From Macrostomum lignano (taxonomy: Eukaryota), in the NCBI GenBank assembly GCA_002269645.1, contig NIVC01000025.1, positions 62,001-126,000 of the forward strand: a DNA stretch of 64,000 nt, read 5' to 3'. The first letter of the stretch is position 1; every line of letters starts with the position of its first letter. The notes under the pieces are model-generated. The model had not been told where the DNA came from, ran no database searches, and saw nothing but the letters and a program-made list of their open reading frames with translations. This document shows positions 16,766-63,692 of this stretch, one piece after another. The position numbers and the translations under genes were made by a program.

Positions 16766-18820
16766 ATGACGTCATGGGATGAAAAGGTGGGTGGCGAGCC
16801 GGCCGACTACGGCAACGCGGTGCTGAGCGCCAACGGCAGCTACACGATCCTGCCGGAGCCCGTCAAGACTTTCCTCTGCAATTTCGAAGCAGCCATCCGC
16901 AATCGCAACGTGTATGACATCATACAGTGCTACGAGGCCCAGTTTCCAAAGCTCACCGAGCGGTTCTTCGCCAAGTACAACTGGCCGGCAACCCAGGTGG
17001 TGACGGAGATTGTCAGCCGGAGTCTGGGCGGCAAGGAGCCGGACCAGCTGTTCGTCATCCTGTACACGGAGATGTACTACAAGCACATCTACGCCCACAT
17101 TGCCGGCGGGCCGAGCTTCGAAGATCGGGAGGCCTCCTATTTTAACTATTGCGACTTCTTCAATTTCGTGTTAGGCACGGATACTCCGGTGACTCACGAG
17201 CTGCCCTACCAGCTGCTTTGGGACATCATTGACGAGTTCATCTATCAGTTCCAGAACTTCACCCAGTACCGGGCCAAGCTCAAGAATAAGAAAGATGAAG
17301 AGATCAGCACGCTGAGGGACAGTGTCACCACCTGGAACATTCATTCCGTGCTGAATGTGCTGCACTCACTAGTTGAGAAGTCCTGCATCAATGAGCAGCT
17401 GAGAGAGCTCGCCTCTGGCGGCGATATATCCGCTGTGGCTGGGGAGTTTGGCGAGCGGCAGCTGTACAAGATGCTGGGCTTCTTCAGTCTGATTGGCCTG
17501 TGCAGGCTGCACTGCATTCTGGGCGATTTCTTTCAGGCGTTGAAGGTAATTTTGCAGTTGTTTAAATCTGGGCTCAGGTTCGGGATTCGAACCATTTCCT
17601 TCGATTCTCATTTAGTAGGATTCGAACCCCTTTCTTTGATCCTCGTTTTTATTGGGATTCGAACCCCTTTCTTTAATTCTCATTTAGTGGGATTCGAACC
17701 CCTTTCCTTGATCCTCATTTAGTGGGATTCGAACCCCTTTCTTTAATTTTCATTTAGTGGGATTCGAACCCCTTTCTTTAATTTTCATTTAGTCGGATTC
17801 GAACCCCCTTCTTAGATTCTCATTAAGTGGGATTCGAACCCTTTCTTTGATCCTCATTAAGTGGGATCGAACTCCTTTCTTTAATCCTCATTTAGTGGGA
17901 TTCGAACCTCTTGCTTCAATCCTCAACCGTATACCCGCCGCCTGAAGGTCCTTGAGAACATCGACGTGAGCCGTCTGGACCTGTACTGCAACGTGCCCAC
18001 CTGCAACATCACCACCTCCTATTACGTGGGCTTCTCATTCATGATGATGCGCCGCTACGAGGACGCGATTCGAACTTTGAACGACGCTCTGGCCTATCAC
18101 AACCGGGTGAAGTCCTCTCTGGCCGGCCGGCCGGACGTGGCCGACTATGTTGCTAAGCAGACGGACCAGATGTGCCACCTGCTGTGCCTGTGCCTCAGCC
18201 TGCACCCGATGCGCGTTGACGAGATCGTGCACGCCCAGATCAAGGAGAAGTACAACGAGAAGAATCTGAAACTGTCTCGCATGGATCTGGACGAGATCGC
18301 CAACACGTTTCAGTACGCCTGTCCGAAATTTCTGTCCCCTGTGCCGCCGAACTTCGACCTGCCCGAGAATTACCAGATGAACCCGATGCGCCAGATCAAG
18401 GAGGAGTTCATCAGCGAGATCAAGCAGCAGGCTCGCATCCCGGATATCCGCTCCTACCTGAAGCTGTACACCACACTTAGCATAGAGAAACTGGCCGGCC
18501 TGATGAACACGGAGCCGCAGGTCCTGCACCGGGAGCTGATGTGCTACAAGCACAAGATGCAGAATATTGTCACAGCCGATGCGGCCGCAGCCGCCGCCGC
18601 GGAGGCCCCGACAGCCAGCTCCTCAGAGTTGGATTTCTACATCGACGGCGACATGATCCACGTGGCCGACACCAAAGTGGCTAGAAAGTTTGGCGAGCTG
18701 TTCATCCGGAATATTCTCAAATTGGAGGATGTGAACCGGGCTCTGACCCGGCTGGACCAGTTCATCTATGGCGTGGCCGCTGGCGAGGCCGGGCCGCAGG
18801 CTGGGTCAGCCCGCTCCTAA
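16766..18820 (+). CDS. EIF3L: Eukaryotic translation initiation factor 3 subunit L, 2 exons (16766-17545, 17948-18820), 550 aa
   Basis: FPKLTERFF, LYTEMYYKHIYA, LWDIIDEFIYQFQ, WNIHSVLNVLHSLV, YKMLGFFSLIGLCRLHCILGDF, GFSFMMMRRYEDAIR, IRSYLKLYTT, LDFYIDGDMIHVADTKVAR; phase-0 GT-AG intron joins ALK|VLENID. Confidence 0.96.
17575..17925. repeat. About 35-bp minisatellite, about 10 copies, each with a tRNA T-arm/B-box motif on the minus strand (eIF3L intron)
   Basis: GGGATTCGAACCC in each unit; reverse complement GGGTTCGAATCCC. Confidence 0.9.
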
Positions 18821-39000: not shown

Positions 39001-40135
39001 CCAGATGTGACAGACACTGTTAAATTCTAACCAGATGTGACAGACACTGTTAAATTCTAACCAGATGTGACAGACACTGTTAAATTCTAACCAGATGTGA
39101 CAGACACTGTTAAATTCTAACCAGATGTGACAGACACTGTTAAATTCTAACCAGATGTGACAGACACTGTGAAATTCTAACCAGATGTGACAGACTTTTT
39201 GAAATAAATTCTATCCAGATGTGACAGACATTCCGAAAATGAGCCGCTTTGCTGAAACCCAGTGAAACTCACCTTCGGCGCCGTGGTCGGGGAGAACCGC
39301 TTAACCGGGACACCTTTGGAGTCCACCAGGAACTTGGTGAAGTTCCACTTGATGAAGTCGCCAAAGGTGCCAGACAGACGGTTCTTCAGGAACACGAACA
39401 GAGGATGGGTGGCGCTGCCGTTCACGTTGATCTTGGAGTACATGTCGAAGGCGACGTTCCAGCGAGCGATGTAGGCCTTGATCTCAGCCTCCGGCCAGGG
39501 CTCCTGGGAGCCGAACTGGTTGCAGGGGAAGGCGGCGATGGCCAGGCCGCGGTCAGCCAGTCGATTGTGCATCTCAACTAGCTGGGTGTAGTTCTTCTCG
39601 GTTGCGCCTCATTTGCAAGCCACGTTCACCACGATGAGAACGCGGCCCCTGGGGTTAGGAGGGAAAATATCAAAGTGCTATAGCTTAGGTCTATTTAATA
39701 ATATAACTAGCTATTATAACTAAAACTTGAGTACTCGAAAACTTACTTGTACTTGTCCATCGACACATTGTTGCCATCGATGTCGACAGCTTCGAAGTCG
39801 TAGACAGTGGATGGCTCCGCACTTGAAGCCTAAAAAAAATTAAAATGTCATTTACTTAGCTTGGAAAGTTATTTAGTTGTAGTAAAAATAGCAATTTTAA
39901 CACTAACACTAAACTAATATAAGTCCGGATAACAGTAACAAACTATTATTTAAGTTCAAATACAAAAACGCAGGGGAATAGTTAACGCTCTTTATTTGGC
40001 CCCTCTATAAACTTTTAAGTTTTACTAGCCAAAAACTGCAGTCAGCAAATCGCAAAAATCCGCGAGTCGGGAACCATTCCTAATCTTAGTTCACTATCAA
40101 ATAGCGCAAAAAATTAAGAAATACTTATGTACCAT
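36085..40135 (-). CDS. GPX4: Selenium-dependent phospholipid-hydroperoxide glutathione peroxidase (GPX4-type), 169 aa; exons 40135-40133 (ATG only), 39829-39747, 39648-39273, 36132-36085
   Basis: VYDFEAVDIDG, VVNVACK-U-GAT, FPCNQFGSQEP, IKWNFTKFLVD, RFSPTTAPK|DMEADVVKLL; phases consistent; length matches cytosolic PHGPx; ATG-only first exon is less certain. Confidence 0.92.
36280..37500. repeat. 22-bp minisatellite (GPx last intron)
   Basis: TTAGTCACCTGTCTTGTGTGTC. Confidence 0.95.
38195..39230. repeat. 32-bp to 30-bp graded minisatellite (GPx last intron)
   Basis: TGTGACAGACACTTTCTGAAATTCTATCTGGG grading to TGTGACAGACACTGTTAAATTCTAACCAGA. Confidence 0.93.
39609..39611 (-). other. In-frame TGA selenocysteine codon at the GPx active site
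   Basis: Minus strand GCT TGC AAA TGA GGC GCA ACC, the conserved GPx catalytic position; frame stays open on both sides. Confidence 0.92.
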
Positions 40136-43114: not shown

Positions 43115-46100
43115 ATGTTAAGTCAACTTCGTCACAGTTGCTTCAAGTTCAAAGCAAGTTTTCAAGGTCTGACCCGACCACCCCTTCGCTGGGCACGCCC
43201 ATCCTCATCAGCATTGCTGCAGCTTCCTGGCCATCAGACGCCAAGTCTGCAGTTGCAGCGTCAGCTACACGATAAGCTGGTGCACAATCGGTCTCTGCGC
43301 TATCGTTTGGTGATATTTGACAAGGATGGCACCTTGGTGTGCTTTCACTCCATGTGGGCGCCTTGGGCTCGAGGCTTGGCAAATCGGCTGGTGAAGGCTA
43401 GCGGCCTTGATGTGGCTGCCAAGGTGGGTTTCTGGGTGAGGGTGAGGTAGAGTGCCAGTTACAGGTGAGGGAGAGTGCCAGTTACAGGTGAGGGAGAGTG
43501 CCAGTTGCAGGTGAGGTAGAGTGCCAGTTACAGGTGAGGGAGAGTGCCAGTTACAGGTGAGAGAGAGTGCCAGTTACAGGTGAGGGAGAGTGCCAGTTAC
43601 AGGTGAGGTAGAGTGCCAGTTACAGGTGAGGAGAGTGCCAGTTACAGGTGAGGGAGAGTGCCAGTTACAGGTGAGGGAGAGTGCCAGTTACAGGTGAGGG
43701 AGAGTGCCAGTTACAGGTGAGGGAGAGTGCCAGTTACAGGTGAGGAGAGTGCCAGTTACAGGTGAGGGAGAGTGCCAGTTACAGGTGAGGTAGAGTGCCA
43801 GTTACAGGTGAGGTAGAGTGCCAGTTACAGGTGAGGGAGAGTGCCAGTTACAAGTACCGGACACCCAATTCCTTCCACTGATCCGGCAGGTTTACGGCAT
43901 CCTGGGAGTCTGCGAGCAGACCCAGCGTGCGGGTCCGGGCCTGCTGGCCGAGGGCACCAAAGCCCAGATGCGGGTAGCACTGGCGCAGATGCTGGCTCAC
44001 GAAGGCATGGACAAGGCCAAGGCCACCGCCATTGTTGAGGCCTGCGTGCCGGAGCCCGCTACGGATGCTGAGCACGTTAAGGAGCTGCACGATCTCAGCC
44101 AGCTGTTCGAGGTGCTGAGGCAGCACGGAGTGAAGATCGCCGTGTGCACCAGCGACCAGCGGGAGAGCACCATTGAGTCGCTTCGCCGGCTGGGGGTGAG
44201 GCGGGTGATGGTGTCTCAGGGAGGGTGGGGCAGGTGATGGTGTCTCAGGGTGAGGCGGGTGATGGTGTCTCAGGGAGGGTGGGGCAGGTGATGGTGTCTC
44301 AGGGTGGGGCGGGTGATGGTGTCTCAGGGAGGGTGGGGCGGGTGATGGTGTCTCAGGGTGGGCGGGTGATCTTGTCTCAGGGTGGGGTGGGTGATGGTGT
44401 CTCAGGGTGGGGCGGGTGATGGTGTCTCAGGGTGGGGCGGGTGATGGTGTCTCAGGGAGGGTGGGGCGGGTGATGGTGTCTCAGGGTGGGCGGGTGATCT
44501 TGTCTCAGGGTGGGGTGGGTGATGGTGTCTCAGGGTGGGGCGGGTGATGGTGTCTCAGGGTGGGGCGGGTGATGGTGTCTCAGGGTGGGGCGGGTGATGG
44601 TGTCTCAGGGTGGGGCGGGTGACTTAAAAATGTGTCTCAGCCTGACTCAAACAGATATTTCAGCATGCCTCAAACAGGTGTCTCAGCATGACTCAAACAT
44701 GTCTCAGCATGACTCAAACAGAAATTTCAGCATGCCTCAAACAGGTGTCTCAGCATGACTCAAACAGATATTTCAGCATGACTCAATCAAGAACCTCAGC
44801 ATGACTCAAACAAGAACCTCAGCATGACTCAAACAGATTTTTCAGCATGACTCAAACAGATATTTCAGCATGACTCAAACAGGAACCTCAGCGTGACTCA
44901 AACAGGTGTCTCAGCATGACCCTGATGCGCCTCCTCCCAGGTGTCCCACCTAGTTGACAAAGTGGTGTGCGCGGACGATCCAACCAGCCTGCCGAAGCCG
45001 GACCCGCACAACGCCCTGATGATCTGTGACGCTTTGAGCGTGCATCCAAAGGACACCGTGATGGTCGGGGACACGGCCACCGACATGCAGTTCGCTAAGC
45101 AGGCTGGTCTCGGCCTGGGGGTCGGCGTTCTGAGCGGCATTGGGAGGTGCGTTTTGTTGAATTCGGTAGCCCGTAAATTGGTCAGATCAATTTATAAATA
45201 TTGGTCAAACCAGTTTGTAAATTTGTTTGATTGATTCGTAAATTGGTGAAATCATTTTAGAAGTCTATAAGATAATTGTTTTAAATTGGTCAGATTAATT
45301 TGCTAATTGGTCAGAGTAATTAAAAAATGGTCTAAACAGTTCATAAGTTTGGTAGCGTAATTTGGTAGCAACACATAAGTTGATAAAATAAATTTACAAA
45401 TTGTTCAAATCAATTTGCAGGTTTTTTTAAACCAATTTACAGATTAGTCAATCCAATTTGCAGATTAGTCAAACCAATTTGCAGTTTAGTCAAACCAATT
45501 TGCAGTTTATTCAAACCAATTTGCAGATTAGTCAAACCAATTTGCAGTTTATTCAAACCAATTTGCAGATTAGTCAATCCAATTTGCAGATTAGTCAAAC
45601 CAATTTGCAGTTTAGTCAAACCAATTTGCAGATTATTCAAACCAATTTGCAGATTAGTCAATCCAATTTTCAGATTGGTCAAATCGATTTGCACATTGTT
45701 TATAATAAATTTAAAATGAACTATTTATTTTCGCTCTGTATTCTAGGAAAGCCGACTTGGAAGCTGCAGGCGCCAGCACAGTAGTAAACACTGTGGGCGA
45801 TGTGCTGCCAAATTTCTTCCCAGACCAGCCGATCAGCTTGACGGAGTCTGCGCGCCTCATCGCCGAGCGCGACTGGCGGCTGATCATCTGCGACAAGGAC
45901 GGCAGTCTGGCCGACGTGCGCACCCGCTGGTCGGAATGGGCGCTGCGGGTTGGCAACCGCCTGGCCGAAGCTACCTCCGAATCGGTGGCCGAAAATTTCT
46001 ACGATCTCATCGGATTCGACCCGGACACTGGCCGGATTCTGGGCGGTCCGTTGGCCGAGAGTCCGCTGTCCGATTTGCGCGATATGCTTGAGAGTCTGCT

Positions 46101-49100
46101 GCTGTTGAAGTGGCGGGTGGACGACAAGCAGCTGAGGGGAATTCTGGACCAGGTGAAATTCCATTGTCTACCTGGTTACCTTGAATTATGATGAGAAAGC
46201 CAATCATTTCTGCTCCATGGTGAAAATTGCGATTCTCTTCAGTCAAGTTCGGGATTTCCCTTAACCACTGTAATCTCGGATTTCTCTCACGTGAGTGCGG
46301 GATTCCCTTCGTTCCAATCGGGATTCCCCCCAATCCAACTCGGGATTCCCTTCAATCTAACTCGGGATTCCCCTCAATCCAACTCGAGATTCCCCTCCAT
46401 CTGATCGCGATTCCCCTCAATCCAACTCTGGATTCCCCCCAATCCAACTCGGGATTCCCCTCAATCCAATCGGAATTTCCCTTCAATCTAACTCGGGATT
46501 TCCCGAAATCCAACTCAGGATTTCCTTCAATCCAACTCGGGATTCCCATCAATCTAACTTGGGATTTCCCGAAATCCAACTCGGGATTTCCCTCAATCTA
46601 ACTCAGCTGATTCCCCTCAATCCAACTCGGGATTCCCTTCAGTCCAACTCGTGATTCCCCAACTCAGGATTCCCCTCAATCAAGCTGGCTACTCCGCCCC
46701 CCTCTGCAACCAATCCAAGGTGTGGGACGACGGCAGCTCGGTCAGCAACCGCGCCGCCGACTCGCTGGCCGCCGATGGCATCCCGGAGGCTCTGGCCGAC
46801 CTTCGCTCGCTCGGCTGCCGCGTCGCCGTGGTGACGTCGGACTCCCGAGCCAGCCTGAACCAGTTCCTCACCGACTTCAGCCTGGCCAGCCTGGTGGATT
46901 ACAGCCTGACCCCGGCCGAGCACCAGCCCTGGAGCGGCGCCTGCAAGTCGCAGCCGCTGCTGGCCGCCTGCCGCCTCGCCGGCGTCTCCCCAGCCGACGC
47001 CGTCGTTGTTGGCGACACTCGCGCCGATTTGTCCGGCGGCCGGCGCGCCCGTCTCGGCGCCACCGTCGGCGTCCTGAGCGGCATGTCGGGACCGGAGGCG
47101 CTGATGCCGCACGCCGATTTGCTGGTGCCGAACCTGCCAGGCTTGACCGGCCTGCTCAAGCGGCGGCCTGCAGCTGAGCTCGGCCGGAGGTCCTACTCCA
47201 CCTCCGCGGCGTCTGCCGAATACGATTACGTCATCGTTGGGGCGGGCAGCGCCGGCTGCGTATTGGCTAACCGATTGACCGAAGATTCCAATGTTCGCGT
47301 GCTGCTGGTGAGTAGCCTGTCTGGGTTATTTTTAGATCCTGGATGGGTTTGAATCTCAGCTGAACTTCAGGATCCTGAATGAGTTTGAAACTCAGGTGAA
47401 CTTCAGGATCCTGAATGAGTTTGAAACTCAGGTGAACTTCAGGATCCTGAATAAGTTTGAACCTCAGGGAAACTTTAGGATCCTGGATGAATTTAAGCTT
47501 CAGGTAAACTTCAGGATTCTGAATGAATTTGAGCTTTAGGTAAGCTTCAGGATTCTACTAGCAATCTACGCCCCCCGTTGGGGAGCCAAAGAAATGCAAT
47601 ACACGTTTTTTTAATAAGCTACATGTATCCTTGAAATATTAAAAAATCTCCTGTCAAACCTTGTAAGCCTTGACATGTCAGTAATTCCCCCCCACAAGCT
47701 TTAACATATCAACTTCCCCCCTTGACATCTCAGCAATGCCCCCAATAAGCCTCAGGTAAACTTCAGGATCCTGAATGAGATTCAGCTTAATCTTAACTTC
47801 ATGATTCTGAATGAGTTCGAGCTTGAGCTAAAGTTTTGTATCTTTAATACCCAGAGTAAAAATGAATATTCTTCCAGATCGAAGCCGGCCCCACCGACCG
47901 TCGCAACCTGTTCATCCACATGCCCGCCGCTCTCATGTACAACCTGTGCCACGACAAGTACAACTGGTACTATCACACTCTGCCGCAGAAGCACATGGAC
48001 TCCAGGGTGATGTACTGGCCGAGAGGTCGCGTCCTTGGTGGCAGCAGTTCGCTAAACGCTATGGTTTACGTTCGGGGTCATGCATTTGACTATGACAGGT
48101 AAATATAGGGGCAATTCATGTGTCTCACTCCTGCTATAATTTTTAACGCTCTTGCGATATCGAGAGCTGATTCAGAATATCCCATTTATCAATTATGAAT
48201 CTTGTGTATATATGAGGTGGGTTGCGCGGGACTGTAGATACAAGACGTCACGAGTCTGGGATGCACGGGTCATAAGCTTTCTGTTAAGTGTCATAGGCTG
48301 TATCAGGGGTCCGTTATGAAAGGGTCATATGCCTTTTGTTAAGGGGTCATAAGCATTTTGTTAAGGGGTCATTGGCCTTTTTCAGGGTCATAGACCTTGT
48401 TTTAAGGGGCCATAGGCCCGGAAGCACAGGTCATAAGCCCTGTACCAAGAGATCATGGGCCTCGGAGCAAGGGGTCATAATCTTCGTGTCAAGGAGTCAA
48501 TCTTCGTGTCAAGGGGTCATAATCTTGGTGTCAAGGAGTCATAATATTCGTGTCAAGGAGTCTTAATCTTCGTGTCAAGGAGTCAATCTTCGTGTCAAGG
48601 AGTCAATCTTCGTGTCAAGGAGTCAATCTTCGTGTCAAGGGGTCATAATCTTGGTGTCAAGGAGTCATAATATTCGTGTCAAGGAGTCTTAATCTTCGTG
48701 TCAAGGAGTCAATCTTCGTGTCAAGGAGTCTTAATCTTCGTGTCAAGGAGTCAATCTTCGTGTCAAGGGGTCATAATCTTGGTGTCAAGGAGTCATAATA
48801 TTCGTCTCAAGGAGTCAATCTTCGTGTCAAGGAGTCAATCTTCGTGTCAATGAGTCAATCTTCGTGTCAAGGAGTCAATCTTCGTGTCAAGGAGTCAATC
48901 TTGGTGTCAAGGGGTCATAGCCTGGTATTAAGGGGTCATAGCCTGGTGTTAAGGGGTCATAGCCTGGTGTTAAGGGGTCATAGCCTGGTGTTAAGGGGTC
49001 ATAGCCTGGTGTTAAGGGCTCATAGCCTGGTGTTAAGGGGTCATAGCCTGGTGTTAAGGGGTCATGTTTGTAGCAGAGGGGTCACAGAGTCAGCAATCTC

Positions 49101-52100
49101 GGCAGCTGATTGTCACCCCTCGGCCACCCCCAGGTGGGCCAAAGAAGGCGCCGCAGGCTGGTCCTACGCGGACTGTCTGCCCTACTTTCGCAAAGCTCAG
49201 CATCACGACGACCTGCCGGCTGACGATTACGTCGGCGGCGACGGGCCGCTGCACGTGTCGCGAGGTCGCACGGCGCATCCGCTGCACAGCGCCTGGCTAG
49301 CGGCCGGTCAGGAGGCCGGATATCCGCTTAGCGACAACTTGTACGGCTATCAGCAGGAGGGAGTTGGCTGGCTAGACATGACCGTGCACAATGGCAGGCG
49401 GTGGTCAACCGCTACAGCTTATCTTTGGCCGGCTGCCAAGAGGCCAAACTTGACTGTGGTTACCGACAAGCTGGTGACGAGGTAAAGGGTTGGATGAGTT
49501 GACTGCAAAAGTTTTGTTTGTTTGACTGCTCAAGTTGGGGATGTTTTTGGGAAGACTGCTCAAGTTGGGGATGTTTTTGGGAAGACTGCTCAAGTTGGGG
49601 ATGTTTTTGGGATAACTGCTCAAGTTGTGGATGTTTTTGGGATGACTGCTCAAGTTGTGGATGTTTTTGGGATGACTGCTCAAGTTGTGGATGTTTTTGG
49701 GATAACTGCTCAAGTTGGGGATGTTTTTGGGATGACTGCTCAAGTTGGGGATGTTTTTAGGATGAACGCTCAGGATAACTGCTTGAAGTTCAAGGATCAG
49801 AGTGATTTAGATCCTTGCTTGTGCTTGGGATCGGAGTGGTTGGGATTCAGATCACTGGCAGTCTGAGCAGTGCAAGCCCCACCCTCTCCCCTCCCCAGCC
49901 TGATGTTCGACGGTCTCCGTGCTACCGGCCTGCAGATGCAGGGCAGGCGTGGCGGCGGCGGCGACAGCCAGACGGTCCGCGCCAATCGCGAGGTCATTCT
50001 CAGCGGCGGCGCCATCAACTCGCCCCAGCTGCTCATGCTGTCCGGCATTGGGGACGCTGACCAGCTGCGCAATCTGGGCATCCCGCTGGTGCACCACCTG
50101 CCCGGAGTTGGTGCCAACCTCCAGGTGAGAGCCCATAGCACACACTACCCCGTAGCACCCACCACCCCATAGCACCCACCACCCCATAGCACCCACCACC
50201 CCATAGCAAACACTACCCCACAGCACCCACCACCCCATAGCACCCACCACCCCACAGCACTCACCAACCCGTACCACCCACCACCCTATAGCACCCACCA
50301 CCCCATAGCACCCACCACCCCATAGCACTTACTACCCCACAGCACCCACCAACCCGTACCACCCACCACCCCACAGCACCCACCACCCCATAGCATCCAC
50401 CACCCCACAGCACCCACCACCCTATAGCACCCACCACCCCATAGCACCTACCACCCCACAGCACCCACCAACCCGTACCACCCACCACCCCACAGCACCC
50501 ACCACCCCACAGCACCCACCACCACAAACGTATCTCACTGTCTACCTCACCGCTCCCACCGCCGTCAGGACCACCTGGAGCTCTACGTGCAGCAGCGGTG
50601 CACTCAGCCAATCACACTGTACAGCGCCCAGTGGAAATTCCCCTGGAACATGGTGGGCATCGGACTGCGCTGGCTGACCACCCAGACAGGCTGGGGCGCC
50701 ACGTCTCACCTAGAGACTGGCGGCTTCATCCGCACGGAGGCTGGCGTGCCTCATCCGGACGTGCAGTTTCACTTCCTGCCGTCTGTGGTCACGGATCACG
50801 GTCGGAAGTCGGGCAATTGTCACGCGTTTCAGGTAGGCATTGTTCATTAGGTGCTGGCATTATTGATTTTTTCTAATATTTCACATTGTTTTTCACTCCA
50901 CTTAATCCGCTTCACAAATATTATAATCCTACAATCTCCCAATGATCCAGTCCTAATCCGCTTCCCAAAGATCTTCCCATAATTTACTTTTAATAATCCA
51001 CTCACGATGATCCACCTCCGATAATCTACTCAATTATTACTTCTGATGATCTACTTCCAACAATCTACTTCCGATAATAAATTTCTGATAATCCACCTCC
51101 GATAATCCACTTCCCACAACCCACCTCCGATAATCCACTTCCCACAACTCACCTCCGATAATCCACTTCCCACAACCCACCTCCGATAATCCACTTCCCA
51201 CAACCCACCTCCGATAATCCACTTCCCACAACCCACCTCTGATAATCCACTTCCGATAGTCTACCTTCGGTAATCCATTTCCAAGAAATATTTTATCTTC
51301 GATAATTCATCTCTAATAATATCCTCCCGATAATCTACTCCCGATGATCCAATTCCAATAATGTACTTTCGATAATCCATTACAGATAATACACTTCTAC
51401 ATTCCACCTCCGATAATTCATCTCTGAACATCTATTTCAACTGGATAAGTTATTTCGACAATTAACTTCCGATAATCCACTCCCGATTATTTACCTCCAA
51501 TTAATATTATTAGATCAAACTATAGTCAGAGTTTATCCCAGACCGTTAATAATCATATCCAAACGAATCCTCCAGGTGCACGTGGGCCCCATGCGGCCGG
51601 AGAGCCGCGGCACGCTTCGGCTTGCCTCGGCGGACCCGCGCCAGGCGCCCCTGCTGGATCCAAACTACATGGCCACCGAGCGGGACAGGTGGGAGATGCG
51701 GCAGTGCATCCGGCTGGCTAGGGAGATTTTCGCCCAGCCCGCGTTCGACCAGTACAGAGGTGAGATAATAGTAAATCCCCATAGCAACTGTCATTCCTAT
51801 ACTAACAGCATCTATTGCCAAATAAAAAATCATCACAATAGCAACGATTTGGCTAGCTCCATAGCAACGGTTAGGCTCCCTCCATAGCAACGATTTGCCC
51901 CCCCCATAGCAACAATTTGCCCCCATAGCAACGATTTGCCCCCATAGCAGCGATTAGCCCCCATAGCAACGGTTAGGCCCCCATAGCAACGGTTAGGCCC
52001 CCATAGCAACGGTTAGGTCCCCCATTGCAACGGTTAGGCCCCATAGCAACAATTTGCCCCCATATCAACGGTTAATATGGCCCCCCATATCAAGGGGGCC

Positions 52101-52597
52101 TAATAGCAACGTTTAGTCCGCCATAGCAAGGGTTAGAACTAATACCAATCATTAGCCCTCTTAGCAACGATTAGCCTCCCTAGCAACGATTGATCCCCAT
52201 GGTAACAACCATTCGATCTCCAGGCTCCGAGCTGCAGCCGGGCTCCGAGGCCCGCACCGACGCCCAGCTGGACGCATTCGTCCGGGCCGCCTCCGACTCG
52301 GCCTACCACCCGTCCTGCACCTGCCGCATGGGCCCGGCCGCCGACCCCACGTCCGTGCTGGACGAGAACCTCCGGGTTCGCGGACTCGACGGCTTGCGCG
52401 TCGTCGACGCCTCGGCGATGCCCTCGATTGTGTCAGGAAATTTGAACGGGCCAACCATCATGCTGGCCGAGAAGGCCGCCGACATCATCAGGGGCCGCCA
52501 GCCGCTGCCACCAGCCACCGAGGTCCCCGTGTGGCAGCCGGCCCAGCCGGAAAGGCAGCGAGACGGGGAGCCGGTCAGGCGATTGGAGCAGGTTTAA
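43115..52597 (+). CDS. CHDH: Mitochondrial-type fusion protein, 1143 aa: presequence, two HAD-like phosphatase domains, choline dehydrogenase (GMC oxidoreductase). Exons 43115-43423, 43890-44195, 44941-45146, 45747-46152, 46720-47307, 47878-48098, 49134-49481, 49899-50124, 50569-50832, 51576-51759, 52224-52597
   Basis: HAD1: [25 protein letters not shown]; HAD2: [25 protein letters not shown]; CHDH: [105 protein letters not shown]; 3432 nt with all phases consistent. Confidence 0.9.
43435..43855. repeat. 23-bp minisatellite filling HAD-CHDH intron 1
   Basis: GAGTGCCAGTTACAGGTGAGGGA; each unit contains CAG|GTGAG. Confidence 0.95.
44196..44920. repeat. Two adjacent minisatellites filling HAD-CHDH intron 2
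   Basis: G-rich 25-mer GGTGATGGTGTCTCAGGGTGGGGCG starting at the donor site, then TCAGCATGACTCAAACAG-type units. Confidence 0.92.
45430..45680. repeat. 21-bp minisatellite (HAD-CHDH intron 3)
   Basis: TTTGCAGATTAGTCAAACCAA. Confidence 0.92.
46240..46680. repeat. About 22-bp degenerate minisatellite (HAD-CHDH intron 4)
   Basis: CCCTCAATCCAACTCGGGATT units. Confidence 0.9.
47350..47825. repeat. 36-bp minisatellite interrupted by a 190-bp insert (HAD-CHDH intron 5)
   Basis: AACTTCAGGATCCTGAATGAGTTTGAAACTCAGGTG units at 47360-47560, resuming at about 47750. Confidence 0.8.
48330..49065. repeat. Composite 20/21-bp minisatellites (HAD-CHDH intron 6)
   Basis: TCTTCGTGTCAAGGAGTCAA and GGGGTCATAGCCTGGTGTTAA units. 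Confidence 0.92.
49530..49780. repeat. 30-bp minisatellite (HAD-CHDH intron 7)
   Basis: CAAGTTGGGGATGTTTTTGGGATGACTGCT. Confidence 0.93.
50130..50525. repeat. 17-bp CA-rich minisatellite (HAD-CHDH intron 8)
   Basis: CACCCACCACCCCATAG. Confidence 0.92.
51000..51500. repeat. Degenerate minisatellite (HAD-CHDH intron 9)
   Basis: CCACCTCCGATAATCCACTTCCCACAAC-type units. Confidence 0.88.
51860..52205. repeat. About 20-bp minisatellite (HAD-CHDH intron 10)
   Basis: CCCCCATAGCAACG plus ATTTG or GTTAGG units. Confidence 0.9.
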
Positions 52598-54920: not shown

Positions 54921-57884
54921 ATGAGCATGAGACCGCCGAAGCCGCAGGGTCCGCTGCAGGTGGACAAGGCTACTCACCACTCGCTGGAGCTGAACTGGGA
55001 GGCGCAGCTGCAGCAGTCGGCCGCAGAGCAGAGCGGCGAGGACGGCCGACTTCGAGTAGAGGTCCAGTGGTGCCGATTTGAGAACACCTGGGAGGTGGCC
55101 TACAAAGGATTCGATGTGCGCTGCGTCTGCGCAGGCCTGGAGCCCAACCAGGAGTACCAGGTGGGCAGTTGAGCTCTGCGAAATTCGAAATCTTGATGGC
55201 TGTTTAATTTAACTCTGAGGGACATTGCTAATACAGATGACGCCAATTCCGTTAGAAACGTTACCGTGACAAGAATTGCTATAGAGAGTCATTGCAAACA
55301 ACTCACTCTAGCGACTATGGGGCGACTCTTGTGACTTTTTAGCGACTGGTGCGATGGAGAAGCGGTTTTTGAGTCTGGAGCGCATCACGTAAGCTGCAGA
55401 ATCGTAAAAGAGTCGTGAAAAAGTCGTCCAAGACTCGTTGTGTTAGCGCTTAACTTTCTACTGACTCAAGTAGACTAAAGAGAGTTGTTATAACTGCGAA
55501 ATGCGATTCTAGCTCGTATAATTCGTAAAGTGACGCAAATGCGCTTTAGACTCACACTCAGTGATTCTACAGAAACTCTGGCACGCCTCAGATGCGACTG
55601 ACTCTACGGCCTCAGAGTATCATTGAAGCGCCCCGTGGTTTCTTCAGAGTCGCAGACATAAAACGCCTCAAAATGACTTTGTCAATTCTTTTCCATTTTA
55701 CCTGTGTTATCTGTAACGACTCTGAGGAGATGCAATTGACTCTGGGACCGCTTCTTAGCCTACATGTAGGTACCGTTTTTAGCGGAATGGTACAATACAT
55801 TCTTGCAGAAGCCTTGAAAATCGTGTCTCGTTGCGTCTAAACTCAATGTGAGCGATGGTTTACTAGCGAGGAGGAGCACTGATACGTACACAGGCATGGC
55901 ACAGGCTCACAGGATGTCCCTTCCCTCTACGTGATTACAGTTGAGCTACTCCAGCCCGACAGCAAGAATTCGTTTGTTTTTTAGATTTGTGGATTGAGTG
56001 CCCGCAGCCCCTGGATGTAAGAGCAACTGCAGCACCCCCCCCCCCTCGTCAAAACCCAGGTGCGAATCCGGTTCGGCAACGGGCACGGCTGGGGCGACTT
56101 CAGCGAGCCGGTGACATCGAAGACCGCCGCCAAGCCGTTCAGCGGCGAGGATCTGCACCGGTGTATTCGTCGACGAAATTTGGACGCTCTGGTGAATGCG
56201 CTGGAGACCGGGGAGGCCAACCCCAATGCGCCGGATGACAAAGGTTTTACGCCTCTGGCTGAAGCGGCTCTGGAAGGCTTGCTGGACTATTGTCAGGCGC
56301 TGCTGGACCATCGGGCTGATGTCAACTGGTCTGGAGACAATGGTGCGTCGAAGGGTTGAGGCTGGATTAGTTTACATATTACCGTTGTGGTGTACATGCC
56401 AAATGAATTTTACTTCCTGATAGAGTGTACCCTCAGGGAGAAATAAATATTTTTTCATCACCAAGACAATGATTGCATTTGATCTGTGGTAGTAAAGATT
56501 ACCATTATTGTACAATAATTTAGCATGCACAGCACGTTACTCTGTTGATTTTATGTAGTTCTGTAGTAAAATGATTTTTTCTTATCAGAATTCTTATCTT
56601 AAATTGGCGTCCAAAAATTACACAATGTTTGAGTTTTTTCGCCGTGTTATTCGACAGTACAGTGGTGATTTTTTAAATTAATGTGTTAGTACATGGATTC
56701 TAGAGTGTGTGGCAGAAGGAGGACTTAAGTGGGACGGGAAACCTCGTTTCTTAGAAAATTTTTGAAGGCGGCTTTTCCCGAAAAAATACACTACGGAGAT
56801 AGGAAGTTTTTATTTTTTCAGCAAAAAATTGCTATTGCTTTTGATAGGAGGCAGATCCAGTGTTCATTTTTTGATATGTTGTGCCTTTCTTATTGCTCTA
56901 TCGATATTCATAGCTTTTCGTTCAGAAAATTAGGATTCTATGTTAATTTTTTTTCTACGTACATTTCCTTTACCTAAACAATAATAAAAATGCATGGCAC
57001 AGCTTCAATCTTTGGTTTTATGAATCTATTTTGTCATCTCTGTTACAAATATTTGTTACTCAGTCAGCTAAGGATGATAAAATAGACTCATAAAACCAAA
57101 GAGCCGAGCTGTGCCATTTTAATGGTTTTTAGGCACAAGACAAGTGCAGATGTACGTAGAATAAAAATAACGTATTTTTAAAGTAATAAAGTATTTTTCG
57201 GAAAATCCGGCCTTCAAAACTTTTCCAAGAAACGAGGTTTCCCGTCCTTCTACTTAAGTCGTCCTTGGTGTTGCATTGCTGACAAAATAAACATTGCTGA
57301 TCAAAGTCGTTTGTCTAATGTTTAATTTTCAAAGAACTTCCCGATCCTGCACCGCCGCAGGCAAGACCTGCCTGATGCTGGTGGCCTACAAAGGCAAGCC
57401 GGAGGTGCTTCAGTGGCTGCTGGAGTCGGCCAACGCCAGTTTGCATCCGCGCGATCGCAACGGGCTCAGCGCGCTGCACTACGCGGTGGACGGCGAACAG
57501 CTGGACAATGTCCGACTCCTGCTGGACGCCGGAGCCGACCTGCACGCCAAGGACAACGCGGGCTGCACGCCGCTGCTCCGCTGCGCCCAGCACCGCAATA
57601 ACGGCAACTCAGCATTGGCAGTCGAGCTGCTCAACCGTGGAGCTCTAGTCGACGAGACCGACTCCAGCGGGCAGACGGCGCTGTTTTACTGCGTGATGAA
57701 CCGGCACGAGAAGCTGGCCGCTGTGCTGCTGCATCACGGAGCCGACATCCGGGCCACCAACAGCCGCGGCCTGTCCGTGCTGAAGGCCACAGACGGCCAG
57801 CAACCGGACCGCAAGGCGATGCGGGAGCTGCTGCTTGAGCACGAGGAGAAACGCCGGTCAGAGCAGCAGCAGAAATCCGCTTAA
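54921..57884 (+). CDS. FANK1: Fibronectin type III and ankyrin repeat protein 1, 348 aa; exons 54921-55160, 56060-56342, 57361-57884
   Basis: N-terminal FN3 (PPKP..V.K.THHSLELNW, GLEPNQEYQVRIR), EDLHRC, then ankyrin repeats (GFTPL, GKTCLMLVAYKG, GLSALHYAVDG, GCTPLLRC, GQTALFYC); architecture and length match FANK1. Confidence 0.88.
56716..57266. mobile_element. Palindromic MITE with about 75-bp TIRs and a second internal inverted pair (FANK1 intron 2)
   Basis: AAGGAGGACTTAAGT..GGACGGGAAACCTCGTTTCTT.. vs ..AAGAAACGAGGTTTCCCGTCC..ACTTAAGTCGTCCTT; inner pair near 56991-57040 and 57072-57120. Confidence 0.8.
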
Positions 57885-61835: not shown

Positions 61836-63692
61836 ATGCCCAACTCCGTCCAATTAAAAGCCAACAAAATCCACAGAATGCACACAGGAAACACAGGTAG
61901 AGTTGAGGTTTTATCTAGTTTAGTCAAACAGAAGATCTGATAGAAGTAAAAAAACGCAAGGGTAAGTGAGTAGACTGTTGCTGGACGCAGCCAATTCCCC
62001 GCAGACATGAGGATAGAGCGAAAGGGTCAGAGAGGAGACGCCGGCTAGCCACAACCAATCAGCGCAGAGATCAGGATAGAGCGAAAGGGTCAGAGAGGAG
62101 ACACCGGCTAGCCACAACCAACCAGCGCAGAGATTAGGATAGAGCGAAAGGGTCAGAGAGGTGACGCCGGCTGGCCGCAACCAATCAGCACAGAGGTGAG
62201 GATAGAGCGAAAGGGTCAGAGAGGTGACGCCGGCTGGCCGCAACCAATCAGCACAGAGGTGAGAATAGAGCGAAAGGGTCAGAGAGGAGACGCCGGCTGG
62301 CCGCAACCAATCAGCGCGGAGATAAGAAGAGAGCATCAGAATTAAACTAAGACACCAACCGGTTTATAGTGAATCTCCACTAATATTTTCTTCAAGTTGC
62401 AGATGAGCCCTACTCATCTCTTTGGATCGTCAAGAAAACTACGGATGAGATTCTAGCGAACTTAAGGCTCTTCGTGGCTCCAACCGCATCTGCGGTGAGC
62501 ATAGTGGGCCTTCTTCTATCCGTATGGGCGTTCGCTAGAACCTGGCGCGTCCTCAAAGGCAAGGACCTGCTGCTGTGCGCCAATATCGCGGCCGACTTCG
62601 TCACCGTTGTTACCACGTAATTTTCAATCGTTTGATTATCAAATGGCCAAGCCGCACACGTTACCAGGCACAAAAATAATTAGGCAAGTTAGCAAAAAGT
62701 GAAGTATAAGAGATAGTCTACTATGAGTAGTAATAGCAGGAGGGCTGCGGGCACCCTTCGGCGACATCGTCCTAGAAGCAGCGCCGAAGTAATTCTGCTC
62801 ATTACGCTGCTCGGCACGCACTCATACACACGCTCACACAGGGTCGTCAGTCATGTACACTCTCACCTAGCAGTCCTTGCCAATGTCCCTTCCTGGTGTC
62901 CGCAGGCTGACTGCCCGCGAGTTTCTCAACGGCGGCCTCGGTAGTCGAATGTCGCTAGCGCTGCCCCACCTGGCTCTGAACTGGGCCTGCAAGCTGTGGG
63001 CCTTCTTCTGGGTGCTCAGCAACAGCCTGTCGTCCAATTTGATTTGTCTGATGGCCGCGGACCAGATCTACGCCCTGTGCTGGCCGCTGCGCCACCGAAC
63101 TCGCATGACAAAGCGGAAATACTGCCTGACGCTCTTCTTGTTCGTCTTTCTCTTTGCCTGCGCAGCAGCTCAGGGCGTCCTGTACGAGACTTACGACTAC
63201 TATGGGCAGAGGTACTGCTACCTGCCACTCATGCTGATCAAAGTCGTCTCCGAGCTCACCCAGGCCTACGCCTCGCTGCTACTTAACGGCGTTGTTAGCA
63301 GCATAGCTCTGGCCGTTAGCAACGTCTTCATCTGCGCCAAGATCTTGTCGATTCGAGCAGCCAGTGCGAAGCTGCAGCAGCAGGCGGACCAGCAGGCGGT
63401 GGACCTGCGCGGCGCCAGAAGCCTGCTGGTCACTGCCGCCGTCTACCTACTGGTCTCGCTGCCCCGAGTGGCGACGTACTTTTTAGCCTATCTCAACATC
63501 CGCTACAACATGTGGGATAACGGGGACATCATGAACCCACTGCTGCTGGCGCTGGCTAACGTTTTCAACTACCTGTTCTACGTGTACTGCTCGGTTAACT
63601 GGCTGCTCTGCGGTCTGCGAATTAGGCTGTTTCGCCACCAGTTCAACCAGCTCCTGGGCCGCCTCAGGCAGCGCGCCACTGGGCCTGCGTAG
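61836..63692 (+). CDS. Divergent rhodopsin-like (class A) GPCR, about 353 aa; exons 61836-61896 (tentative), 62403-62616, 62906-63692
   Basis: Seven hydrophobic helices; TM3 Cys (ACKLW), DRY-like AADQIYALCWPLR, ECL2 Cys (YCY), TM6 LLVSLPR, TM7 SVNWLLC, helix 8 RLFRHQF; phases consistent. Confidence 0.82.
61990..62320. repeat. About 63-bp minisatellite, about 5 copies (GPCR intron 1)
   Basis: ..CGCCGGCTGGCCGCAACCAATCAGCACAGAGGTGAGGATAGAGCGAAAGGGTCAGAGAGG..; one CCAAT per unit. Confidence 0.9.

What the first reader, a model, noticed from the sequence alone, without database searches (positions are those of the whole stretch)
47140..47260. Internal mitochondrial-peptidase-like site at the HAD/CHDH junction: possible mitochondrial polyprotein
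Seen: the linker reads [22 protein letters not shown] directly before [14 protein letters not shown]|STS matches the R-2/R-3 MPP cleavage pattern and looks like the end of a retained CHDH presequence. Known: fungal Arg5,6 is imported as one precursor and cut into two enzymes. Inference: the fusion is co-imported and cleaved into a HAD-HAD phosphatase and free CHDH, or an internal ATG ([10 protein letters not shown]) gives a CHDH-only isoform.
Basis: inference. Interest (0 to 1): 0.7.

Follow-up and report, generated by a model that had tools for sequence, protein, structure and literature searches.

The report
Conserved internal cleavage site in HAD–choline dehydrogenase precursor
A flatworm gene joins two phosphatase-like domains to mitochondrial choline dehydrogenase, and the short linker carries a mitochondrial-peptidase cutting motif kept in almost every animal with this fusion, so the protein is probably imported whole and then cut into two enzymes.

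Summary
The window is Macrostomum lignano DNA. Positions 47140-47260 lie inside exon 5 of an 11-exon gene (43115-52597, + strand). The gene encodes a 1143-aa protein: N-terminal presequence, HAD, HAD, a 20-aa linker ([20 protein letters not shown]), then choline dehydrogenase. My exon model is 100% identical to the RNA-seq-based GenBank model PAA93511.1.

The fusion is old and widespread. HAD-HAD-CHDH occurs in flatworm, nemerteans, an annelid and molluscs. HAD-CHDH occurs in amphioxus, hemichordates, copepods and an acoel.

The linker cannot be aligned between phyla, with about 19% pairwise identity. Even so, R-x-[F/Y]-S-[S/T] is present in 62 of 71 non-redundant fused linkers. It is present in only 4 of 72 presequences of stand-alone CHDH and nowhere in 30,046 aa of folded domains. 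Shuffled linkers never come close to the observed count.

The motif is the MPP R-2/R-3 consensus, and in Macrostomum it also fits R-10. The linker is predicted to be disordered, and the N-termini look like matrix presequences. About half of the orthologues have no internal Met, so a CHDH-only isoform is not the general explanation.

My best reading, at confidence 0.65, is a composite mitochondrial precursor cut internally by MPP, as in yeast Arg5,6 and mammalian ACAD10. Cleavage itself has not been tested. This would be a new member of a known kind.

The parts
43115..52597 (+). Whole CDS of the HAD-HAD-CHDH gene. The 11 exons are 43115-43423, 43890-44195, 44941-45146, 45747-46152, 46720-47307, 47878-48098, 49134-49481, 49899-50124, 50569-50832, 51576-51759 and 52224-52597 (stop included). 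The product is 1143 aa, 124.7 kDa.
   Evidence: Built by hand; all introns are GT-AG. It is 100% identical to PAA93511.1 / BOX15_Mlig009934g1. Pfam finds Hydrolase/HAD_2 twice plus GMC_oxred_N and GMC_oxred_C. NCBIfam choline dehydrogenase scores 803.8 bits against a cut-off of 605.
43115..43300 (+). N-terminal presequence-like region (aa 1-62). It has 10 K+R and 1 D+E, and the first acidic residue is at position 53.
   Evidence: Composition. AF2 pLDDT is below 50 for residues 1-61.
43301..45819 (+). HAD domain 1 (aa 63-298; motif I is FDKDGT). It spans exons 1-4.
   Evidence: Pfam PF00702/PF13419; motif reading.
45877..47157 (+). HAD domain 2 (aa 318-555; motif I is CDKDGS, motif IV is VGDTRAD). 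It spans exons 4-5.
   Evidence: Pfam second HAD stretch; NCBIfam generic HAD hits, all below cut-offs; motif reading.
47083..47085 (+). Internal in-frame ATG (Met531, [10 protein letters not shown]), inside the C-terminal part of HAD2. It is the start of the 613-aa UniProt model A0A1I8FV72.
   Evidence: The Met is not conserved in orthologues.
47158..47217 (+). HAD2-CHDH linker [20 protein letters not shown] (aa 556-575). It is basic, predicted disordered, and the shortest linker in the family.
   Evidence: AF2 gives pLDDT below 50 for P0001 residues 560-575 (model 558-573), between the last HAD2 helix and the first CHDH strand. Net charge is +4 over aa 551-575, which includes this linker.
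47185..47205 (+). Predicted processing motif R565-R-S-Y-S-T-S571. The predicted MPP scissile bond is S567|Y568 (between nt 47193 and 47194). After that, either one residue (Y568) is removed by an Icp55-type peptidase, or the octapeptide YSTSAASA (47194-47217) is removed by a MIP/Oct1-type peptidase, leaving E576.
   Evidence: Read directly from the sequence. Conservation statistics. Consensus definitions come from PMC8734313, PMC12670562 and PMC7996597.
47218..52594 (+). Choline dehydrogenase part (aa 576-1143). It starts with the FAD-binding strand and GxGxxG ([13 protein letters not shown], 47218-47256).
   Evidence: Pfam GMC_oxred_N at aa 577-873 and GMC_oxred_C at aa 966-1101. NCBIfam PRK02106 E=7.6e-242. 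It is 62-67% identical to animal CHDH.

Best explanation
The gene encodes a composite mitochondrial precursor.

Shown:
- One mRNA and one ORF carry an N-terminal presequence-like region, two HAD-type phosphatase-like domains, a short disordered basic linker and choline dehydrogenase.
- The linker carries an R-x-[F/Y]-S-[S/T] motif that is under strong purifying selection wherever HAD and CHDH are fused.

Inferred:
- The precursor is imported into the matrix through its N-terminal presequence.
- The mitochondrial processing peptidase (MPP) removes that presequence.
- MPP also cuts the linker two residues after the conserved arginine (RRS|YSTS, between S567 and Y568).
- The destabilising aromatic N-terminus is then trimmed. 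Either an Icp55-type aminopeptidase removes Y568, or a MIP/Oct1-type peptidase removes the octapeptide YSTSAASA, which would leave E576 directly before the FAD-binding strand.

The products would be a soluble HAD-HAD protein of about 55-61 kDa and a free CHDH of about 63 kDa. Orthologues with two copies of the motif would also release a short spacer, as happens in ACAD10. The fusion would ensure co-expression and co-import of two enzymes that then work apart. The substrate of the HAD part is unknown.
For: 1. Real single gene and mRNA.
- The junction lies in one exon in Macrostomum, amphioxus and Aplysia.
- My model equals the RNA-seq-derived annotation (method in PMC5730564).
- Oyster transcript contigs of 4.0-4.3 kb carry the whole 1191-aa ORF uninterrupted.

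2. Motif conservation.
- 26 of 30 species have the motif, against 0.3 of 30 in shuffles.
- There are 17.8 sites per 1000 aa in linkers, against 0 in 30,046 aa of folded parts.
- 62 of 71 non-redundant fused linkers have the motif, against 4 of 72 stand-alone CHDH presequences (Fisher p=1.7e-25).
- The aligned sites give a consensus of [R/K]-R-x-[F/Y]-S-T-S-[S/A].
- Linker pairwise identity is only 0.19, against 0.68 for CHDH.

3. Match to known peptidase consensus.
- The motif is the MPP consensus: R at -2, a bulky or aromatic residue at +1, hydrophilic residues at +2 and +3 (PMC12670562).
- Yeast Arg5,6 is cut at an internal RSY and then trimmed by Icp55 (PMC8734313).
- The Macrostomum site also fits R-X|(F/L/I)-X-X-(S/T/G)-X-X-X-X| (PMC7996597).

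4. Animal precedent. ACAD10 is cut at two MPP-consensus sites in an interdomain linker (PMC11342911), and 20 of 71 fusions have two sites.

5. Accessibility and controls.
- AF2 places the motif in a low-confidence coil between the domains.
- The internal maximum of a presequence-composition score falls in this linker in 26 of 29 fusions.
- The HAD1-HAD2 linker has no such site.

6. N-termini. The first 30 residues of 27 full-length fusions have a median of 5 K+R and 0 D+E.

7. HAD can work alone. HAD exists as a stand-alone protein with its own N-terminal extension in ascarid nematodes.
Against: - There is no direct evidence of cleavage: no N-terminome, blot or import assay.
- No dedicated predictor (MitoFates, TargetP, iMLP) was available. 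My presequence score is a crude composition log-odds.
- In Macrostomum itself the linker window ranks only 5th of 1061 internal windows on that score.
- The Macrostomum linker is the shortest of all, at 20 aa, and contains Pro and Glu.
- The sequences are related by descent, and the stand-alone comparison set is mostly vertebrates, so the Fisher p-value overstates independence.
- Cleavage is not structurally required for CHDH. GMC enzymes tolerate N-terminal extensions (this rests on my own knowledge).
Confidence: 0.65

Rival explanations
1. The protein stays as one uncut bifunctional or trifunctional enzyme. The linker motif would be conserved because it acts as an internal targeting or import-assisting element (an iMTS-like receptor or chaperone binding site), or for some structural reason, and not as a cleavage site.
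For: Internal MTS-like stretches that are not cleaved are known (discussed in PMC8734313). The linker has presequence-like composition. Nothing here shows cleavage.
Against: Import-assisting iMTS-like stretches are defined by general charge and amphiphilicity, not by an exact R-x-[F/Y]-S-T string. Here the exact protease consensus is what is kept, while the rest of the linker drifts. Real N-terminal presequences of stand-alone CHDH target the protein well with the strict motif present in only 6% of them.
Confidence: 0.15
2. The motif serves a CHDH-only isoform made from an internal start. The start could be the ATG at 47083, an internal promoter, or spliced-leader trans-splicing inside exon 5. 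The linker would then be that isoform's ordinary N-terminal presequence.
For: Macrostomum has an in-frame Met 37 residues upstream of the site, and an older automated model (A0A1I8FV72, 613 aa) starts there. Trans-splicing is common in this species (PMC5730564).
Against: 30 of 65 orthologues have no Met between the HAD 'GVLSG' strand and the first site. No intron interrupts the junction in three phyla. The resulting N-terminus, [12 protein letters not shown]..., is part of the folded HAD2 C-terminus and carries acidic residues. The transcript-based annotation, which cuts at observed trans-splice sites, kept the gene whole. Ordinary CHDH presequences do not need this strict motif.
Confidence: 0.1
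3. The motif is a regulatory phosphorylation or docking site. R-x-x-S is a basophilic-kinase pattern, and R-x-[Y/F]-x-[S/T] resembles a 14-3-3 mode-II pattern. It would act in the cytosol before import, or in the matrix.
For: The only support is pattern resemblance, which rests on my own knowledge. The site is Ser/Thr-rich and disordered.
Against: The conserved positions (aromatic residue directly before S-T, a second basic residue upstream, S/T at the following positions) are those of MPP substrates. The Pro expected at +2 of 14-3-3 motifs is absent. The protein has a matrix-type presequence, and its orthologues are annotated as mitochondrial.
Confidence: 0.05
4. The fusion is an annotation artefact: two neighbouring genes read as one.
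For: None found. Some database entries are split or truncated models.
Against: The HAD2 C-terminus, the linker and the CHDH FAD motif share one stop-free exon. Oyster cDNA contigs carry the whole ORF. The same architecture appears in eight phyla.
Confidence: 0.02

Closest known systems
Yeast and fungal Arg5,6 composite precursor (Friedl et al. 2020, PMC8734313)
   Same: Two enzymes sit in one precursor with an N-terminal presequence. An internal MPP site of the R-2 type lies at the junction, literally R-S-Y in both proteins. The new N-terminus is expected to be trimmed by Icp55. The site is conserved among orthologous fusions.
   Different: The enzymes are different (HAD phosphatase-like plus a GMC flavoenzyme), and the lineage is animal, not fungal. 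The Macrostomum linker is very short, and its MTS-like character is weak on my crude score. The two parts are not known to catalyse consecutive steps. Cleavage is shown for Arg5,6 and only inferred here.
Mammalian ACAD10 (HAD-kinase-ACAD) internal processing (PMC11342911, 2024)
   Same: It is an animal mitochondrial multidomain protein that starts with a HAD domain. It is cut in a disordered interdomain linker at two MPP-consensus sites, releasing a C-terminal flavoenzyme. Many HAD-CHDH orthologues likewise have two sites 15-30 aa apart.
   Different: The two proteins are not homologous beyond the HAD superfamily. The ACAD10 HAD lacks the full DxD motif, whereas Macrostomum HAD1 and HAD2 keep it. 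Cleavage of ACAD10 was shown by blots and proteomics.
Atp25, Rsm22-Cox11 and rice RPS14-SDHB type mitochondrial fusion precursors (PMC5063612, PMC8734313)
   Same: They are composite precursors with MPP motifs at the junctions. Atp25 is cut three times.
   Different: The proteins are unrelated and come from fungi and plants.
Stand-alone animal CHDH (vertebrates, echinoderms, tunicate, Lingula)
   Same: The CHDH part is orthologous, at 62-67% identity. The presequence of the stand-alone enzymes ends at the position that the linker occupies in the fusions.
   Different: They have no HAD part. Their presequences carry the strict R-x-[F/Y]-S-[S/T] motif in only 4 of 72 cases.
Two-step MPP + MIP/Oct1 (R-10) precursors such as Prx V (PMC7996597)
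   Same: The Macrostomum sequence R566-S|Y-S-T-S-A-A-S-A|E576 has Arg at -10, an aromatic residue at -8 and Ser at -5 relative to the residue before the Rossmann strand.
   Different: Position -8 is Tyr here, whereas the listed substrates have F, L or I. In other species the distance from the site to the fold is 8-42 aa, so an octapeptide reading is not general.

Membership tests
Composite mitochondrial precursor cut internally by MPP (Arg5,6 / Atp25 / ACAD10 kind) | Two or more independently folding proteins encoded in one ORF and one mRNA | tested here: met
   Single exon across the junction. Pfam domains. Model identical to the RNA-seq-based annotation. Full-length oyster cDNA contigs.
Composite mitochondrial precursor cut internally by MPP (Arg5,6 / Atp25 / ACAD10 kind) | N-terminal matrix-targeting presequence | tested here: met
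   In Macrostomum the first 62 aa have 10 K+R and 1 D+E. Across 27 orthologues the first 30 aa have a median of 5 K+R and 0 D+E, against 3.2 and 3.7 in background windows. AF2 predicts the region disordered. No dedicated predictor was run.
Composite mitochondrial precursor cut internally by MPP (Arg5,6 / Atp25 / ACAD10 kind) | Internal MTS-like stretch at the junction | tested here: inconclusive
   This rests on a crude composition log-odds trained on stand-alone CHDH presequences. The internal maximum falls in the linker in 26 of 29 fusions. In Macrostomum the linker window ranks only 5th of 1061. TargetP and iMLP were not available.
Composite mitochondrial precursor cut internally by MPP (Arg5,6 / Atp25 / ACAD10 kind) | MPP recognition motif (R-2/R-3) at the junction, conserved among orthologous fusions | tested here: met
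   RRS|YSTS at aa 565-571. 62 of 71 fused linkers carry R-x-[FY]-S-[ST]; shuffles and folded parts give approximately 0.
Composite mitochondrial precursor cut internally by MPP (Arg5,6 / Atp25 / ACAD10 kind) | Actual separation into two polypeptides inside mitochondria, dependent on MPP | not testable with these tools
   This needs blots, import assays or N-terminomics.
Choline dehydrogenase (GMC oxidoreductase, BetA/CHDH) | GMC_oxred_N and GMC_oxred_C domains, N-terminal GxGxxG FAD motif, score above the curated family cut-off | tested here: met
   PF00732 E=5e-56 and PF05199 E=1.5e-40. NF002550 scores 803.8 bits against a cut-off of 605. TIGR01810 scores 721, just under its cut-off of 732. 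Identity to animal CHDH is 62-67%.
HAD-superfamily phosphatase (subfamily IA-like) | Motifs I (DxDxT/S), II (S/T), III (K) and IV (GDxxxD) present | tested here: met
   HAD1 has FDKDGT, CTSD, KPDP and VGDTATD. HAD2 has CDKDGS, VTSD, a CKSQP Lys and VGDTRAD. Pfam PF00702/PF13419 hit twice.
Named HAD subfamilies (phosphoglycolate phosphatase, PhnX-like, PpaX and others) | Score above the curated NCBIfam cut-off | tested here: not met
   The best hit is TIGR03351 at 70.7 bits against a cut-off of 218.9, and all others are far below their cut-offs. The closest PDB chain is at only E=2.8e-11. Substrate unknown.
Two-step MPP + MIP/Oct1 (R-10) presequence | Arg at -10, F/L/I at -8 and S/T/G at -5 relative to the mature N-terminus | tested here: inconclusive
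   R566, Y568 and S571 fit relative to E576 (consensus from PMC7996597). However, Tyr is not among the listed -8 residues, and the mature N-terminus is unknown.

The most novel reading that the evidence does not exclude
HAD-CHDH is an ancient bilaterian mitochondrial polyprotein. The stand-alone CHDH of vertebrates, echinoderms and tunicates arose by gene fission at the internal presequence-like linker, so today's vertebrate CHDH presequence would descend from an internal MPP site.

The contrast between 87% strict motif in internal sites and 6% in N-terminal presequences of the same enzyme would then be a natural experiment. It would show that MPP needs a much stricter consensus to cut internally than to cut at a free N-terminus.

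The HAD part might supply or regulate the CHDH substrate, for example as a phosphocholine-type phosphatase, which would make the fusion a pathway 'Rosetta stone'.
Probability: 0.3. Interest if true: 0.7.

Novelty: new member of a known kind. Interest (0 to 1): 0.6.

Why it matters
Only a handful of mitochondrial polyproteins are known, mostly in fungi, and ACAD10 (2024) is the clearest animal case. A second animal example would show that internal MPP processing is a regular, ancient way to deliver enzyme pairs to mitochondria. This one is conserved across at least eight phyla, with dozens of natural sequence variants of the site.

The sharp difference between internal sites and ordinary presequences of the same enzyme gives a testable rule for what MPP needs in order to cut inside a protein.

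The finding also bears on annotation and physiology. The 'choline dehydrogenase' of molluscs and other marine invertebrates, which is studied for betaine osmolyte synthesis, is made as a precursor of about 130 kDa with one or two uncharacterised phosphatase-like domains. That should change how its gene, protein size and regulation are interpreted.

Tried and rejected
1. Internal-ATG CHDH-only isoform as the general explanation. Rejected because the Met is absent in 30 of 65 orthologues, there is no intron in the junction in three phyla, and the 613-aa UniProt entry is just an older automated model.

2. Merged-gene artefact. Rejected because of the single exon and the full-length cDNA contigs.

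3. Identifying the HAD substrate. NCBIfam, PDB and homologue names give only generic 'phosphoglycolate phosphatase-like' labels, far below family cut-offs. No vertebrate orthologue appeared among the hits.

4. Apparent stand-alone HAD proteins of 370-405 aa from metatranscriptomes. These turned out to be truncated HAD-CHDH fusions ending in ...GAGSAG, and they again carry the motif. True stand-alone HADs were seen only in ascarid nematodes.

5. Composition-based internal-presequence score. It supports the linker in 26 of 29 orthologues but is not decisive for Macrostomum itself, where the linker window ranks 5th.

6. Literature searches for a described HAD-CHDH fusion or for oyster CHDH protein size. 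Nothing relevant was found.

7. R-10/MIP reading. It fits Macrostomum exactly but does not generalise, because the site lies 8-42 aa from the fold in other species.
Full report
**What is there**

It is not an isolated ORF. It lies in exon 5 (46720-47307) of an 11-exon gene that I assembled by hand from stop-free stretches and GT-AG boundaries. The exons are:
- 43115-43423
- 43890-44195
- 44941-45146
- 45747-46152
- 46720-47307
- 47878-48098
- 49134-49481
- 49899-50124
- 50569-50832
- 51576-51759
- 52224-52597

The product is 1143 aa (124.7 kDa). Pfam finds two HAD-type hydrolase domains, followed by GMC_oxred_N (aa 577-873) and GMC_oxred_C (aa 966-1101). The C-terminal 568 aa score 803.8 bits on NCBIfam 'choline dehydrogenase' (cut-off 605). 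The HAD parts match only generic HAD families, far below any curated cut-off.

Both HAD domains keep the catalytic motifs. HAD1 has FDKDGT, CTSD, KPDP and GDTATD. HAD2 has CDKDGS, VTSD, a conserved Lys and GDTRAD.

**Source and reality of the fusion**

The best database hit is Macrostomum lignano at 99% identity. My model is 100% identical over all 1143 residues to PAA93511.1 (BOX15_Mlig009934g1), and differs at 7 residues from the second genomic copy, g2. That annotation comes from a genome-guided RNA-seq transcriptome in which transcripts were cut at experimentally observed trans-splice sites (PMC5730564). A full-length fused mRNA is therefore supported in this species.

Other species give independent support:
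- In the Pacific oyster, two assembled transcript contigs of 4.3 and 4.0 kb carry the whole 1191-aa orthologous ORF without interruption.
- In amphioxus, one exon encodes residues 267-573, which cover the HAD C-terminus, the linker and the CHDH N-terminus.
- In Aplysia, one exon encodes residues 553-1200.

A merged-gene artefact is excluded.

**Distribution**

HAD-HAD-CHDH proteins of 1160-1235 aa occur in nemerteans, the annelid Owenia, and many bivalves, gastropods and cephalopods. Single-HAD-CHDH proteins of 860-1005 aa occur in amphioxus, two hemichordates, copepods and the acoel Symsagittifera. Vertebrates, echinoderms, a tunicate and Lingula have stand-alone CHDH of about 600 aa with an ordinary N-terminal presequence. 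HAD alone, with its own N-terminal extension, occurs in ascarid nematodes.

**The linker**

Between phyla the HAD-CHDH linker is 19-116 aa long (median 56) and essentially unalignable. Mean pairwise identity is 0.19, against 0.50 for HAD1, 0.38 for HAD2 and 0.68 for CHDH. One element survives: R-x-[F/Y]-S-[S/T].
- In 30 species it is present in 26 linkers (32 sites, 17.8 per 1000 aa).
- Composition-preserving shuffles of the same linkers give a mean of 0.3 species, and none of 2000 shuffles reached the observed count.
- The folded HAD and CHDH parts of the same proteins (30,046 aa) contain no site at all.
- The HAD1-HAD2 linker never has one.

I then pooled all sequences gathered and removed near-duplicates:
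- 62 of 71 fused linkers carry the strict motif, and 65 of 71 carry R-x-[FYL]-[SA]-[ST].
- Only 4 of 72 N-terminal presequences of stand-alone CHDH carry the strict motif (Fisher p=1.7e-25). The sets are phylogenetically structured, so this p-value overstates independence.
- The six exceptions still carry near-motifs such as R-T-F-V-T, R-L-F-S-P and R-R-M-S-T.
- Twenty of the 71 have two sites, 15-30 aa apart.
- The 87 aligned sites give a consensus of [R/K]-R-x-[F/Y]-S-T-S-[S/A].

**Why this points to MPP**

The pattern is the textbook MPP site: Arg at -2, a bulky or aromatic residue at +1, and hydrophilic residues at +2 and +3 (PMC12670562). With removal of the aromatic residue by Icp55 it becomes the 'R-3' form.

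Two precedents are close:
- Yeast Arg5,6 is separated into two enzymes by MPP at an internal R-S-Y, followed by Icp55 trimming (PMC8734313). This is the same tripeptide as in Macrostomum.
- Mammalian ACAD10, which also begins with a HAD domain, is cut at two MPP-consensus sites in a disordered interdomain linker (PMC11342911). This parallels the two-site orthologues here.

In Macrostomum the sequence R566-S|Y-S-T-S-A-A-S-A|E576 also fits the R-10 rule for MPP followed by MIP/Oct1 (PMC7996597). That would place the mature N-terminus right before the FAD-binding strand [10 protein letters not shown]. Tyr is not among the listed -8 residues, however, and the spacing does not generalise, so the trimming step is left open.

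**Context that fits**

- The N-termini of 27 full-length fusions have a median of 5 basic and 0 acidic residues in the first 30 aa. Macrostomum has 10 K+R and 1 D+E in its first 62 aa.
- An AlphaFold2 model built on a 28-sequence alignment has mean pLDDT 74. It gives pLDDT below 50 for residues 1-61 and for residues 558-573 of my model. The second stretch is the coil between the last HAD2 helix and the first CHDH strand that contains the motif.
- A crude presequence-composition score, trained on stand-alone CHDH presequences, has its internal maximum in this linker in 26 of 29 fusions. In Macrostomum, whose linker is the shortest, the window [21 protein letters not shown] ranks 5th of 1061.

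**Rivals**

It cannot explain the conservation:
- 30 of 65 orthologues have no Met between the HAD 'GVLSG' strand and the first site.
- No intron is available in the junction for an alternative first exon in three phyla.
- The Met lies within the folded HAD2 C-terminus.
- Ordinary CHDH presequences do not need the strict motif.
- The 613-aa UniProt entry that starts there is an older automated model.

An isoform could still coexist in Macrostomum. An uncut protein with an import-assisting internal signal would not need an exact protease consensus. A kinase or 14-3-3 site fits the conserved positions less well, and this protein is matrix-targeted.

**Verdict**

The motif is under strong selection specifically where HAD and CHDH are fused. 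The most likely mechanism is co-import followed by internal MPP processing into a HAD(-HAD) protein and free CHDH of about 63 kDa (confidence 0.65).

What is shown: the gene structure, the single mRNA, the domain content, the motif conservation and its match to MPP consensus, and the predicted disorder. What is inferred: import, the cut itself, the trimming enzyme, and the functional reason for the fusion.

I found no paper describing this fusion. It would be a new member of the known class of composite mitochondrial precursors.

Noticed in passing
window 43441-52188 (all 10 introns of the gene): Every intron is mostly filled by its own unrelated minisatellite, with periods of 17-36 bp and 6-23 copies. 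Examples are 23 bp x18 at 43441-43852 (the unit begins with a donor-like GGTGAG), 17 bp x23 at 50132-50523, and 20/42 bp x21 at 48468-49065. Tandem repeats are reported to make up a large share of this genome (PMC5730564). Similar arrays fill much of the rest of the window.
   Followed up: partly
P0007, P0008, P0012, P0016, P0019, P0020 (mollusc orthologues); P0004 (Owenia): In molluscs the second HAD domain has lost the second Asp of motif I (FDLHGT or FDLNGT in place of FDKDGT), so it is probably not a working phosphatase. In Owenia it is the first HAD that is degenerate (FDKNGT). Macrostomum and the nemerteans keep DxD in both. This recalls the non-catalytic, regulatory HAD of ACAD10.
   Followed up: partly
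window 47083 onward; UniProt A0A1I8FV72 (P0242): A 613-aa 'choline dehydrogenase' entry for M. lignano starts exactly at the internal Met ([10 protein letters not shown]). It is an older gene model that misses the HAD-HAD half.
   Followed up: yes
L004 16625-18568 (Aplysia californica): In Aplysia, a single exon encodes the end of HAD2, the linker and the entire CHDH part (aa 553-1200). The CHDH part of the Macrostomum gene has six introns.
   Followed up: no
Oyster cluster members P0246 (229 aa, on 71 contigs) and P0252 (814 aa): Many oyster transcript contigs carry the ORF split into a 229-aa piece ending ...FCSR and an 814-aa piece starting MTGLDL.... This suggests frequent intron retention, or a variant within HAD2.
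   Followed up: no
P0157, P0159, P0160, P0162, P0164, P0170 (metatranscriptome proteins); P0155, P0158 (ascarid nematodes): The apparent stand-alone HAD proteins of 370-405 aa are truncated copepod-like HAD-CHDH fusions, and each again has an R-x-F-S-T site. Genuine stand-alone HADs of about 300 aa, with an N-terminal extension, occur in Parascaris and Anisakis.
   Followed up: partly
N-terminal regions of the 30 fusions: The N-terminal presequences of the fusions themselves rarely use the strict motif (2 of 30). The internal site is therefore much more stereotyped than the N-terminal one in the same proteins.
   Followed up: partly
window 9108-13600 (+), 17885-18817 (+), 39180-39608 (-), 57291-57881 (+), 62871-63689 (+): Other stop-free stretches look like exons of a threonyl-tRNA-synthetase-like gene, a translation-factor-like protein, a glutathione-peroxidase-like protein, an ankyrin-repeat protein and a possible membrane receptor. 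I judged this by eye from the translations only.
   Followed up: no
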